A stretch of 64,000 nucleotides of DNA. Origin: Magallana gigas. Taxonomy: Eukaryota. The stretch spans positions 38,378,001-38,442,000 of the forward strand of contig NC_088859.1 in NCBI RefSeq assembly GCF_963853765.1, given 5' to 3'. Positions within the stretch are counted from its first letter, which is position 1; each line of letters opens with the position of its first letter. The notes beneath the pieces were generated by a model. That model was not told where the DNA came from. It did no database searches and saw only the letters and a list, made by a program, of their open reading frames with translations. The translations under genes were made by a program, and so were the position numbers. Of the stretch, positions 705-3,545 are shown piece by piece.

Positions 705-1444
705 TTACGATTCTACACGTACGGTCATCATTTTGTCCGTGAACCCGTTGGTATCTTCATTCTTTGTAATGATTACAAAACCAAAGTCGTCCTTCATCCC
801 GAACTGCAGGATATTACTGTATAAGTCGTCATCTGTTGGGCGCATTAGTTTCTTGATGCTAAAATAGGATGAAAAATAAATTTAATCTTTTTTTTTTATC
901 TTTTTTCAACGTGGCGAAGTTGTAAATGAAGTCAACAGTGTAATTCTGAATAATATTCGTATACTTGATATACAATGTTGAAAACAATTATTATACTGAT
1001 CTACTGATGGGCAAAATATTTTAAGGTATAAGGAATCTTTCTTTAAATATTATGGGGTGATCAAATATGGTCGAACGTGGTCAAATCTATCATAAAATCA
1101 TTCTGGCTTTATTGGATTTGATCATCTTATAATACTCAAAGAATGATTCCTTATTACTTTTATTTAAATAATTATCATCAATCGTACGGTTAGATATTAT
1201 TCATGAAATGAATTGGACTACACGTTACAAAATCGATTCGTATTGTTATTATAGAAAGCCACTGGAAAATGTAAAAATATCTGTTTAACATCTAAAATGC
1301 TTGTATGTAAAAACGTGTATCTATCATAACAATTCACAATATGAGTCCTGTGAATATAAACCTATATAAGCACACTCGTTAAATCGTAGTTTTTACGGGA
1401 ATACATAAATATGTATAGGGATTGTAATTTTGGAACACAAATAG

Positions 1445-1489
<45 letters not shown>

Positions 1490-3545
1490 CATACTTATCG
1501 TCCTCCATAATGCTTTTGTCCAGAATCATCTTAAGGAGGCCCGGTTCAATCTTCTCCATCACGCTGTAGATCGGTTCATAAAGGTCAACTCCCATCATGT
1601 CAATGACTAACTTCTTTCCATGCCTGCAAAAACAAGTATTCAATAAAATTGCAGATAAAAACATTTGGTTAATGTGAAATTATTTGTGTGATGATAAATA
1701 TTGGTACAGGTTCTTCAATCAATTCTATTTGACAAATGCAATAGAAAATTTTAACTCCGCTTGTATGTTCATAAGGTTGTCGTATGTTCTCAGTCCTTGG
1801 CAACTTCATTTAATTAAGGAATAAGGAATCATTCTGAGTATTATGAGGTGATAATTTCGGTCGGGGCGTGATCAAATCCAATGAAGGGCTTTATGATAGA
1901 TTTGACCATGCCCCGATCGAAATGATCACATCATATGATTCCTTATTACTTATATTTATATAATTTTCAGCCATTGTACGATTAAATGTTTAAATATAAA
2001 TAAGCAAACACCGCTGGCGCACCAATTATACGTCATTTGAAGCTATTGGGCTTTATATTACAAAATCGATACGTAGTGTTATCACAGGCAAAGACACTGA
2101 AAAATGTAAATATTATGTATTGTACCCAGTGGTTTAACTGACCTGAGAGCAGCGAGAGTCGCTATTCGAATCCTGTCAGGAGAGTTGATGAATTCGTGGT
2201 CTAGACCGTTGATGAATGTACACTCCCGGTACTGTAGGAATCTCCCGGATATCTCGCTCGGATCGATCATCATTGGAAACCTATAATATGATAACAGAAT
2301 GATGTGGTCACTCGCAGAAATTACCAAAATCGAAGCTAAAGACAGTGAATACTTTGAAATCCAAAGATCGCCCTCATGTGAGATCCATGGTAAAAAAAAA
2401 AAAGAAAAGAAAAGAAAACATGTATATATACCCGGTATATTCATTGGTGGGTGATGCTTGTTAAAATTGAGAACACGAGAAAAAAAAGCTTGCGTATTTC
2501 TTTTAAATTCTGTCATAATCCTTTAGAATTTCGGGTACATTTTAATTATTTTTTTTTATTAGAAAGGCAAAATAATATATATTCAAATCAAAGATGTGTA
2601 TTTTGCTTGTGAATATCCGTATATTTTTTAATGTCTTTAAACAAAAGCCATCCCAAATAATCCATACAAAATATTTTTTCGGTTTACATGTGTTTAGATT
2701 GGAAAGATTGAACTGTAATTCATTCCACCAATTGACAATCTCTCTGTGTAAACCAATCCACGTAAAAATATACATTGAATTGTCGTTTACTGACCATTTG
2801 GAATTTTTCACGATGTTGTCCGCGTCTTGGAGCACAAACGCGGCCAGCTCCTTGACAGTGATTTTGTGTTCTGGGGGTTTGGCGGGGGCTGCTTCAGCTG
2901 TAAAGACCCAAAAACGTGCATGAAGCTCAAGGTCGCTGTAAATATGACTGGACATGAACATCATTATTTATCTTACCTTTAAATAAATAAAGCTGCATTT
3001 ACAACAAAACTAAATAAATCGAATATATCTCAAATATATGTATTAACTATGTTTTGCCGGTGTGGACCGGAAACTTAATATATGCAATAAGATAAAAAAA
3101 ATCGATATTCCGATGTAGAGCCGTACCAAGAAAAACAACTAAGAGCGGACGACCAACTCTTGTCGCTACCTGTAAGAAAATCAATTATTTGGAAATACCC
3201 TTTAAAAAGAAGCACTTCAAAATCAGACTTTGTTTGAGTTATTTGATGTGCAAGGACAGCACGAAAATCTTTGACACCCCTAATACCCGATTTCAAAAGT
3301 GGATATGCACTGAACAAAACAAAGAAAAAAGAATAAATAATGAAAAATAAAAATACATATTACAGAGAAATTGAGGACCGTTGTGAATAAATAGGACATC
3401 AGCACTGACCTGGTTTTGCGGTGGCGGCAGGTTTGGCCGGTGTTTTGGTGGTACTTTTAGGAGCCGCCGCTTTAGCTGGTTTGGCCGCAGTACCACCTTT
3501 ACTGGCGGTTGTTTTGACCGTTTTTCCTGCGGGTTTAGGTGGCAT
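705..3545 (-). CDS. Short IQANK1 paralog (219 aa): basic Ala/Lys/Pro/Thr N-terminal tail plus IQANK1 C-terminal (dynein AAA5-like) domain; no IQ, ankyrin or coiled coil
   Basis: Five phase-consistent GT-AG exons: 3545-3410, 2897-2795, 2280-2143, 1623-1495, 858-705 (660 nt, ends TAA). Protein: MPPKPAGKTVKTTASKGG...KITVKELAAFVLQDADNIVKNSKWFPMMIDPSEISGRFLQYRE...LAALRHGKKLVIDMMGVDL...LDKSIMEDD...DDFGFVIITKN...VRVES*. It aligns with exons 1 and 11-14 of the neighbouring gene, with the same intron phases and an identical 129-nt exon. Confidence 0.85.
1021..1280 (+). repeat. Dispersed repeat family (likely DNA-transposon derivative), copy A
   Basis: TAAGGAATC...GATTCCTTA inverted-repeat block followed by TTACAAAATCGAT...GTTAT...GAAAATGTAAA. 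Similar copies at ~1813-2113, ~19711-19982 and partially ~61240-61375. Confidence 0.6.
1450..1487. repeat. (CT)n microsatellite
   Basis: Pure CT dinucleotide run immediately after an exon donor of the short paralog. Confidence 0.95.
1813..2113 (+). repeat. Dispersed repeat family, copy B
   Basis: Same TAAGGAATCATTC...GATTCCTTA and TTACAAAATCGATACG...GTTATCACAGGCAAAGACACTGAAAAATGTAAA blocks as copy A. Confidence 0.6.

What the first reader, a model, noticed from the sequence alone, without database searches (positions are those of the whole stretch)
705..3545. Head-to-head 'minimal' IQANK1 paralog: basic tail fused directly to a stand-alone dynein-AAA5-like domain
Seen: a five-exon, stop-free 219-aa gene on the minus strand, whose ATG lies 1.38 kb from the IQANK1 ATG in divergent orientation. 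Its exons correspond to IQANK1 exon 1 and exons 11-14 with the same intron phases, so it equals IQANK1 with exons 2-10 (IQ, ankyrins, coiled coil) cleanly absent via a phase-1 to phase-1 join. It is strongly diverged yet keeps the core motifs and an intact frame, which argues for an old functional duplicate rather than a pseudogene. Inference: a long/short pair sharing one promoter, where the short form could be an assembly partner or a Ca2+/calmodulin-independent competitor of the long form in motile cilia or sperm.
Basis: partly seen in the sequence, partly recalled or inferred. Interest (0 to 1): 0.8.

Follow-up and report, generated by a model that had tools for sequence, protein, structure and literature searches.

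The report
Short IQANK1 paralog in oyster
The Pacific oyster really does have an expressed, conserved 219-residue gene made of a basic tail plus a dynein-AAA5-like domain next to IQANK1, but it belongs to an old, widespread and unstudied family of short IQANK1 relatives rather than being an oyster oddity.

Summary
On the minus strand, five exons with GT-AG borders (3410-3545, 2795-2897, 2143-2280, 1495-1623, 705-858) give a 219-aa ORF. A public transcript contig and stranded polyA reads confirm all four junctions and minus-strand transcription.

- **Exon match:** the exons correspond to exon 1 and exons 11-14 of the divergent IQANK1 gene (4925-9424). Intron positions and phases are identical.
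- **Selection:** it is under purifying selection (dN/dS about 0.1) and has a 219-aa ortholog in Crassostrea virginica.
- **Distribution:** the same five-exon short gene occurs in other bivalves, gastropods, nemerteans, a brachiopod, a hemichordate, a brittle star and amphioxus.
- **Neighbourhood:** it usually sits next to IQANK1. The pair is head-to-head in oysters and a hemichordate, but tandem in a nemertean, a brachiopod and Solemya.
- **Protein:** a disordered basic tail (pI 10.7) plus an AAA+ alpha/beta domain. Its only Pfam match is the dynein AAA5 family (AAA_9, below threshold). It has no Walker A motif, no catalytic Walker B glutamate and no lid domain, so it is probably a binding module, not an ATPase.

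Function is unknown for the whole family. The cilia link and the long-short partnership remain inference. Databases list these genes as "IQANK1-like" or uncharacterized, and I found no paper on them.

The parts
3410..3545 (-). Short gene, exon 1, coding part (aa 1-45): MPPK start and K/P/A/T-rich basic tail. Ends in phase 1.
   Evidence: GT donor at 3409-3408; transcript contig block 3878-3410; joint 2897>3410 in reads and contigs.
3546..3936 (-). 5' UTR of the short gene, at least this long. The true start was not mapped.
   Evidence: L001 reaches 3878. RNA contig record 10 of run X3 reaches 3936. No reads in 3996-4731.
2795..2897 (-). Short gene, exon 2 (linker, first strand and helix of the domain). 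Counterpart of IQANK1 exon 11.
   Evidence: Entry phase 1, as for long exon 11.
2143..2280 (-). Short gene, exon 3 (FPMMIDPS... motif, where an AAA+ P-loop would sit). Counterpart of IQANK1 exon 12.
   Evidence: (33% identical to 8656-8796).
1495..1623 (-). Short gene, exon 4 (RHGKKLVIDMM...). Counterpart of IQANK1 exon 13, also 129 nt.
   Evidence: (47% identical to 9003-9137).
705..858 (-). Short gene, exon 5, coding part with the TAA stop at 705-707. Counterpart of IQANK1 exon 14.
   Evidence: highest read depth of the gene.
500..704 (-). 3' UTR of the short gene. An AATAAA signal on the minus strand lies at 518-523.
   Evidence: L001 reaches 554. Reads cover 500-683 in one orientation only. 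The signal is read from the sequence; the exact end is inferred.
3937..4795 (.). Untranscribed spacer between the two divergent genes, presumed to hold both promoters.
   Evidence: No RNA depth in 3996-4731. No X-box with up to 1 mismatch. No blastn similarity to the Saccostrea spacer outside the UTRs.
4925..9424 (+). IQANK1 (long paralog): 14 exons, 579 aa. Basic tail, IQ-like motif, ankyrin repeats, coiled coil and C-terminal AAA_9-like domain (exons 11-14 at 8458-8554, 8661-8795, 9011-9139, 9259-9424).
   Evidence: 560/579 identical to P0173. Pfam on P0173: Ank_2 at 2.6e-23, AAA_9 at 1.5e-05. Reads lie on the opposite orientation to the short gene.

Best explanation
This is a genuine protein-coding gene of Magallana (Crassostrea) gigas: the short paralog of IQANK1.

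**What the protein is**
- It has a disordered, strongly basic N-terminal tail of about 53 residues that starts MPPK.
- The tail joins directly to a 165-residue AAA+ alpha/beta (large-subdomain) module most like the AAA5 module of dynein heavy chains.
- It lacks the IQ motif, ankyrin repeats and coiled coil of IQANK1.
- It also lacks a Walker A motif, the catalytic Walker B glutamate and a lid domain. It most likely neither binds nor hydrolyses nucleotide and acts as a binding or scaffold module.

**Shown**
- The gene is spliced, polyadenylated and under purifying selection.
- The same five-exon architecture is kept in many bilaterian phyla, usually beside IQANK1.

**Inferred**
- It arose from a DNA-level duplicate of IQANK1 that lost exons 2-10 through a phase-1 to phase-1 join.
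- The domain contacts the same partner as the C-terminal domain of IQANK1. That partner is probably part of a microtubule- or cilium-linked structure, with the basic tail contributing electrostatic attachment. The short form would supply that contact without calmodulin or ankyrin-mediated control.

**My odds**
- Real, constrained protein-coding gene: 0.97.
- Non-enzymatic module: 0.8.
- Shares context or partner with IQANK1: 0.45.
- Cilium or flagellum context: 0.4.
For: **Gene model and RNA**
- Searches confirm the model, the transcript contig, the stranded reads and the joints. Both genes are expressed in the same polyA libraries.
- RNA-type runs from several studies hold 0.34-0.49 of the stretch's words. 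That is about what the spliced mRNA alone would contribute, since the 1144-nt contig is 0.34 of the 3325-nt stretch.

**Constraint**
- C. virginica has a 219-aa ortholog, 80% identical.
- The two Saccostrea copies give dN/dS 0.11-0.13 at dS about 0.8. Gigas versus Saccostrea gives dN 0.16 with dS saturated.
- The M. gigas genome holds only one short and one long copy.

**Family**
- Protein lengths among the hits fall into two classes.
- Named short members come from Pinctada, scallops, Solemya, Haliotis, Gigantopelta, Plakobranchus, Lineus, Tubulanus, Lingula, Glandiceps, Amphiura and Branchiostoma.
- The short genes of nine further species (ten genes, two in Saccostrea) were spliced out exactly. 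All share the five coding exons and the phases 0,1,2,2,2; the Lingula model adds one upstream exon, with the MPPK start internal.
- MPPK starts occur in both length classes.

**Adjacency to IQANK1:**

**Fold**
- AF2 model: mean pLDDT 85.7, domain above 90, tail disordered.
- Foldseek's best PDB hits are dynein motor domains (E 2e-3, probability 0.99), followed by p97, FtsH and proteasome AAA+ proteins.
- VIA-align gives Z 8-10 to dynein AAA+ modules.
- In the ESM Atlas, the nearest neighbours outside the family are AAA_9 dynein fragments.
- AAA_9 is the only recurring Pfam hit: 52 of 63 members, best 1.6e-9.

**Motifs and charge**
- IDPSEISG sits where the P-loop would be, and LVIDMM where Walker B would be (sequence, secondary structure).
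- The tail has pI 10.65 and the domain pI 4.99.
- 31 core positions are conserved in both long and short forms. The positions conserved only in long forms cluster at residues 55-75, next to where the coiled coil joins.
Against: - No experiment or paper gives a function for IQANK1 or the short form.
- Tissue of expression is unknown, because run labels were coded.
- AAA_9 scores for the oyster proteins are below Pfam's gathering score: 15 bits for the short and 24.6 for the long, against 27.4.
- A profile of the family found no PDB sequence at E <= 0.01.
- By geometry the best match is dynein AAA1, not AAA5. Classic AAA+ proteins score nearly as well, so the fold alone does not single out AAA5.
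- The oyster promoter region has no RFX X-box.
- A single origin for the short form is not secure. Holding all short forms together is rejected (AU p = 0.006), because the Amphiura and Tubulanus short forms group with their own long forms.
Confidence: 0.6

Rival explanations
1. The short form has a separate job unrelated to IQANK1. For example, it could bind nucleic acid or chromatin through its histone-H1-like K/A/P-rich tail, with the domain re-used for a new partner.
For: - The tail composition and pI 10.65 resemble lysine-rich nucleic-acid-binding tails.
- The weak PDB sequence hits to the tail are ribosomal uL23 N-terminal extensions.
- The short form evolves about twice as fast as the long one: 83 vs 93% identity to C. 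virginica and 41 vs 73% to Pinctada.
- The pair is unlinked in Amphiura and Pinctada.
Against: - IQANK1 has the same kind of MPPK basic tail, so the tail does not set the short form apart.
- 31 core positions of the domain are shared with the long form.
- The two genes are adjacent in six species from four phyla.
Confidence: 0.12
2. The short form is not one old lineage. It has arisen repeatedly from IQANK1 by the same in-frame loss of exons 2-10, or it is repeatedly overwritten by gene conversion from the neighbouring long gene. On this view the oyster gene would date only to an early mollusc. This concerns its history, not its function, and does not exclude the best explanation.
For: - Amphiura and Tubulanus short forms group with their own species' long form with strong support (99/88 and 97/93).
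- The AU test rejects a tree holding all short forms together (p = 0.006).
- Short forms are 58-67% identical to their own long form in Solemya, Branchiostoma, Tubulanus and Amphiura, but only 31-33% to the oyster short form.
- From exon 1, only three in-frame joins are possible in the oyster gene: to exons 2, 5 or 11 (phases).
Against: - In the best tree the other 16 short forms lie on one side of a branch, though with weak support (55/89).
- The exon 1 to exon 2 join and all phases are identical in every short gene examined.
- Amphiura's short gene is on a different chromosome from its long gene, which makes ongoing conversion there less likely.
- Fast short-form and slow long-form evolution alone can produce the identity pattern.
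Confidence: 0.25
3. It is a decaying partial duplicate or a non-coding divergent transcript of the IQANK1 promoter whose open frame is accidental.
For: - The domain is only 36% identical to the long form.
- The first UniProt model (K1QV94, 176 aa) skipped an exon.
Against: - The 219-aa frame is intact in M. gigas and C. virginica.
- dN/dS is about 0.1.
- The same architecture is kept in several phyla.
- The AF2 domain model is confident.
- The polyA mRNA is spliced.
Confidence: 0.02
4. It is an active small AAA+ ATPase.
For: - It has an AAA+ alpha/beta fold with Z 8-10 to dynein, p97 and NVL.
- An R-x-G-K motif is conserved at residues 126-129.
Against: - No GxxxxGK[ST] follows strand 82-85; the sequence there is IDPSEISG.
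- The Walker B position reads LVIDMM, without the catalytic glutamate.
- There is no lid domain and hence no sensor 2.
- The RxGK motif sits just before a strand, not in a P-loop position.
- Its closest relative, dynein AAA5, is, from established knowledge of dynein rather than a test here, a non-nucleotide-binding module.
Confidence: 0.03

Closest known systems
[quoted passage not shown]
   Same: - The same MPPK basic N-terminal tail.
- A homologous C-terminal 165-residue domain: 36% identity, with 31 conserved core positions.
- Identical intron positions and phases for exon 1 and the last four exons.
- Usually adjacent in the genome.
   Different: - The short form has no IQ motif, ankyrin repeats or coiled coil, because exons 2-10 are absent.
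- It is 219 aa against 579 aa.
- It evolves about twice as fast.
- IQANK1 itself has no described function.
Dynein heavy chain AAA5 module (Pfam PF12781, AAA_9)
   Same: - AAA_9 is the only Pfam family matched, by 52 of 63 family members.
- The shared motifs are of the W-P-L-x-I-D-P and A-I-R-F-G-x-P type. This likeness is recalled from dynein sequences and was not aligned here.
- It has an AAA+ large-subdomain fold.
- It has no P-loop. That AAA5 also lacks one is established knowledge of dynein, not a test here.
   Different: - It stands alone rather than being one of six modules of a 4,000+-residue motor ring.
- It matches only profile positions 19-128 of 222.
- It has no buttress insertion and no small or lid subdomain.
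- The oyster scores are below Pfam's gathering threshold.
IQCA1/DRC11, an axonemal protein that combines IQ motifs with an AAA+ domain (from my own knowledge, not tested here)
   Same: For the long paralog, the general idea of a calmodulin-binding motif joined to an AAA+-type module in a non-motor protein.
   Different: No sequence relation was tested or seen. DRC11 has a classic AAA domain, and the short form has no IQ motif at all. This is an analogy only.

Membership tests
IQANK1 family (as named in databases) | C-terminal domain homologous to that of IQANK1 | tested here: met
   phmmer of residues 52-219 finds long IQANK1 proteins at E 1e-19 to 1e-10. 36% identity to the oyster long form.
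IQANK1 family (as named in databases) | Shared gene structure (intron positions and phases) | tested here: met
   Entry phases 1,2,2,2 and identical aligned intron positions for short exons 2-5 and long exons 11-14. Exon 1 ends in phase 1 in both.
IQANK1 family (as named in databases) | IQ (calmodulin-binding) motif | tested here: not met
   Nothing lies between the tail and the domain, and Pfam reports no IQ hit.
IQANK1 family (as named in databases) | Ankyrin repeats | tested here: not met
   No Ank family hit for P0005 or P0008. The long form P0173 hits Ank_2 at 2.6e-23.
Pfam AAA_9 (dynein AAA5 region) | Score at or above the gathering threshold (27.4 bits) | tested here: not met
   P0005 scores 15 bits (E 0.014), P0008 scores 20 bits and the oyster long form 24.6 bits. 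Across the family 52 of 63 members match at E <= 0.01, best 1.6e-9.
Pfam AAA_9 (dynein AAA5 region) | AAA+ alpha/beta fold closest to dynein modules | tested here: met
   Foldseek's top hits are dynein. VIA-align gives Z 10 to AAA1 and Z 8.1-8.3 to the AAA5 region, the latter with higher identity. Nearest Atlas neighbours outside the family are AAA_9 fragments.
Pfam AAA_9 (dynein AAA5 region) | Part of a six-module dynein heavy chain | tested here: not met
   A 219-aa stand-alone protein.
Active AAA+ ATPases | Walker A GxxxxGK[ST] after the first core strand | tested here: not met
   Strand 82-85 is followed by DPSEISG.
Active AAA+ ATPases | Walker B hhhhDE | tested here: not met
   Strand 130-134 reads LVIDM followed by M. 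The aspartate is conserved (D134 column), but no glutamate follows.
Active AAA+ ATPases | C-terminal helical lid with sensor 2 | tested here: not met
   The model ends with two strands at 195-200 and 213-218, and the protein stops at 219.
Bidirectional (head-to-head) gene pair | Divergent transcription with starts under about 1 kb apart | tested here: inconclusive
   Opposite-orientation reads. The short 5' end reaches at least 3936 and the long 5' end lies within 4732-4915, so the gap is about 0.8-1.0 kb. True starts were not mapped.
Bidirectional (head-to-head) gene pair | Orientation conserved among relatives | tested here: not met
   Head-to-head in M. gigas, Saccostrea and Glandiceps. Tandem in Tubulanus, Lingula and Solemya.

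The most novel reading that the evidence does not exclude
A stand-alone dynein-AAA5-like module with a basic tail may be an ancient component of ciliated eukaryotes. ESM Atlas holds clusters of about 222 aa with the same fold whose known members are mostly oomycetes and ciliates. It would work as a free copy of one dynein ring segment. For example, it might dock on dynein motors, their regulators or the microtubule surface. In animals it would have been kept next to IQANK1 for over 500 million years because the two are regulated or assembled together.
Probability: 0.12. Interest if true: 0.75.

Novelty: new variant of a known kind. Interest (0 to 1): 0.42.

Why it matters
IQANK1 is conserved from sponges to mammals, yet nothing is known about what it does. 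This work adds three points.
- Many animals carry a second, minimal version that keeps only the basic tail and the dynein-AAA5-like domain.
- That version is transcribed in the oyster, is under purifying selection in oysters, and keeps the same intact five-exon architecture in every species checked.
- It usually lies beside IQANK1.

This marks the C-terminal domain as the functional core of the family. It also gives a small, well-folding protein of about 165 residues that can be expressed, used for pull-downs and localised to find the family's partner. A dynein ring module that lives on as a free protein would also interest those who study how dynein evolved. The value is as a lead, because no function is shown here.

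Tried and rejected
- **Pfam on single exons:** nothing found.
- **phmmer of the protein against PDB sequences:** only chance-level hits.
- **Family profile against PDB sequences:** nothing at E <= 0.01.
- **Complex prediction of the short domain with the long C-terminal domain:** no verdict (score 0.15, mark 0.34). This is evidence neither for nor against binding.
- **RFX X-box and FOX motif scan:** covered the oyster spacer and 1.5 kb upstream of 13 short or long genes. The oysters have none. Overall there were 8 sites against 3.2 expected, and the only perfect site is in Glandiceps. This does not support a cilium-type promoter in the oyster.
- **Microsynteny with the Peptidase_C1 gene that follows the short gene in Lingula and Gigantopelta:** absent from the oyster window and the 20 kb before it.
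- **Literature:** nothing on function from searches for IQANK1, LOC642574, the oyster and scallop locus names, or the full gene name.
- **Earlier notes of this scan:** none near this place.
- **C. virginica coding DNA:** not retrievable, so dN/dS used Saccostrea instead.
- **Pseudogene reading:** rejected (see rivals).
- **Reading the short form as a splice variant of IQANK1:** rejected, because it lies on the opposite strand and has its own mRNA contig.
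Full report
**Where we are.** The window is from Magallana (Crassostrea) gigas. The short protein equals UniProt K1QV94's gene and a Logan protein (P0005) apart from one residue. The window maps to contig C7 of its own assembly. The N run at 26331-26463 was left untouched. Read laying was given 5,501 letters.

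**The observation.** Three-frame translation of the minus strand of 600-3700 shows five open stretches. Joining them at canonical sites gives exons 3410-3545, 2795-2897, 2143-2280, 1495-1623 and 705-858. The total is 660 nt with entry phases 0,1,2,2,2, encoding 219 aa and a TAA stop. The ATG at 3545 lies 1379 bases from the ATG of the plus-strand gene at 4925.

I rebuilt that plus-strand gene as 14 exons and 579 aa, of which 560 match the Logan protein P0173. It carries ankyrin repeats and a C-terminal match to Pfam AAA_9. Dozens of orthologs are named IQANK1.
- Its exon 1 ends in phase 1, as does the short gene's exon 1.
- Its exons 11-14 enter in phases 1,2,2,2, as do the short gene's exons 2-5.
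- The three introns inside the domain fall at the same aligned residues.

**It is transcribed and spliced.** A 1144-nt contig from a public run (L001) carries the uninterrupted 219-aa frame. It aligns to the window in five blocks with exactly the predicted borders, running from 3878 to 554.

RNA-type runs from several studies hold 0.34-0.49 of the sampled words of 554-3878. That is about what the spliced mRNA alone would contribute, since the 1144-nt contig is 0.34 of the 3325-nt stretch. DNA runs hold 0.84-0.97.

In two stranded polyA libraries, the short gene's exons are covered only by pairs whose first mate lies on the plus strand. The IQANK1 exons are covered only by the other orientation. 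Joints 1622>2142, 2278>2793 and 2897>3410 appear in raw reads and in contigs, and one contig bridges 858>1498. The 5' UTR reaches at least 3936, and nothing is transcribed between 3996 and 4731. Both genes are expressed in the same libraries. Depth is 7-16 over the short gene's last exon and 3-4.5 over IQANK1 exon 2.

**It is constrained.**
- C. virginica has a 219-aa ortholog, 80% identical.
- Saccostrea cucullata has two copies. Between them dN/dS is 0.11-0.13 at dS about 0.8.
- Between M. gigas and Saccostrea, dN is 0.16 and dS is saturated.
- The M. gigas genome has only this short copy and the long gene.

**It is not an oyster peculiarity.** A full HMMER search with residues 52-219 found 224 relatives. 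Their lengths fall into two classes, about 205-250 aa and about 450-620 aa. Most members of the short class begin MPPK and have a K/P/A/T-rich tail of 45-70 residues placed directly before the domain.

Named short members come from Pinctada, two scallops, Solemya, Haliotis, Gigantopelta, Plakobranchus, Lineus (three copies), Tubulanus, Lingula, Glandiceps, Amphiura and Branchiostoma. NCBI calls them "IQANK1-like" or "uncharacterized".

I spliced out ten of these genes, from nine species, exactly. All share the five coding exons with phases 0,1,2,2,2 and near-identical lengths for the last three: 135-141, 129-135 and 154-169 nt. The Lingula model adds one upstream exon, with the MPPK start internal.

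The ESM Atlas also holds clusters of about 222 aa with the same fold whose known members are mostly oomycetes or ciliates. I could not retrieve those sequences, so this is a lead only.

**Neighbourhood.**

| Arrangement | Species | Detail |
|---|---|---|
| Head-to-head | M. gigas | this window |
| Head-to-head | Saccostrea | gene starts 1.9 kb apart; a second short copy lies downstream |
| Head-to-head | Glandiceps (hemichordate) | gene starts 1.8 kb apart |
| Tandem, long then short on one strand | Tubulanus | 1.3 kb apart |
| Tandem, long then short on one strand | Lingula | 2.2 kb apart |
| Tandem, long then short on one strand | Solemya | 13 kb apart |
| Not adjacent | Pinctada, one Lineus copy, Amphiura | short gene lies away from the long gene |

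What recurs is adjacency, not a shared divergent promoter.

**History.** On a careful ML tree of the domain (18 short, 27 long), the mollusc short forms of Plakobranchus, scallops, Pinctada and oysters form a clade (90/93). The Amphiura and Tubulanus short forms, however, group with their own species' long forms with strong support.
- A tree that holds all short forms together is rejected (AU p = 0.006).
- The other 16 short forms lie on one side of a branch in the best tree, but with weak support (55/89). That subset was chosen after seeing the tree.

Short forms evolve about twice as fast as long ones. The simplest reading is one old duplicate that lost exons 2-10, with two later conversions or re-origins. 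Recurrent origin cannot be excluded.

**The protein.** An AF2 model built on a 63-sequence alignment has mean pLDDT 85.7. Residues 1-52 are disordered and the domain scores above 90. The tail has pI 10.65 and the domain pI 4.99.

| Search | Result |
|---|---|
| Foldseek vs PDB | best hits are dynein motor domains (E 2e-3, probability 0.99), then proteasome, FtsH and p97 AAA+ domains |
| VIA-align | Z about 10 to dynein AAA1; Z 8.1-8.3 to a region including AAA5, with the highest sequence identity; Z about 8 to p97/NVL |
| ESM Atlas by shape | nearest neighbours outside the family are dynein fragments carrying AAA_9 |
| Pfam | AAA_9 is the only recurring family (52 of 63 members, best 1.6e-9); the oyster short form scores 15 bits, below the 27.4-bit threshold |

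The protein has no Walker A motif, no Walker B glutamate and no lid domain. Thirty-one core positions are conserved in both long and short forms. Positions conserved only in long forms cluster at residues 55-75, where the coiled coil would join. I conclude that it is a degenerate AAA+ large subdomain acting as a binding module.

**What it does.** This is not shown. No paper in the library gives IQANK1 a function. My best inference is that the domain makes the same contact as the IQANK1 C-terminal domain, and that the short form provides this contact without the IQ and ankyrin parts.

The cilium link rests on two things: the likeness to dynein and the phyletic leads (animals, oomycetes, ciliates). 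The oyster promoter shows no X-box, and the one complex prediction gave no verdict.

**Verdict.** This is a real, conserved, unstudied architecture variant of the IQANK1 family. It is already present in automatic annotations but undescribed in the literature I could search. Interest is moderate.

Noticed in passing
window 1143-1254 and 1935-2087 (introns 4 and 3 of the short gene): Two copies of one high-copy element, 79-84% alike. RNA depth is in the thousands on both orientations, with many loose ends, in bins 1052-1235 and 1788-2155. It is probably a small MITE-like repeat found all over the genome.
   Followed up: partly
window 1450-1487: A (CT)19 run lies in intron 4 of the short gene, starting 8 bases behind the exon-4 donor site at 1495.
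   Followed up: no
window 5347-5498 (intron 1 of IQANK1): Inverted repeat with 64-nt arms, 95% complementary and 24 nt apart. It is covered by RNA reads of both orientations and looks like a hairpin-forming transposon remnant.
   Followed up: partly
L005 (Glandiceps talaboti), 261 nt upstream of the short gene's ATG at 10001: A perfect palindromic RFX-type X-box, GTAACCATGGTAAC, sits in the spacer shared by the head-to-head long and short genes. No such site exists in the oyster or Saccostrea spacers.
   Followed up: partly
L009 (Gigantopelta aegis) 17172-17504: About eight tandem 48-nt units inside intron 3 of the short gene each encode the last 15 residues of exon 3 (MAPETLRKALIGAIR-like).
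   Followed up: no
L008 15621-22424 and L009 27327-33043: In Lingula and Gigantopelta a convergent Peptidase_C1 gene follows the short gene. No such gene lies in the oyster window or in the 20 kb before it.
   Followed up: yes
L010 (Saccostrea cucullata) 16853-21301: A second, tandem copy of the short gene (216 aa) lies downstream of the first. The two differ by dN 0.10 and dS 0.8. M. gigas has only one copy.
   Followed up: yes
window 5045/5652 (IQANK1 intron 1): Reads report the joint as 5048>5655 with non-canonical ends, whereas my model has 5045>5652 with GT..AG. The two differ by one letter in the read. This is probably an alignment ambiguity.
   Followed up: no
   Followed up: no
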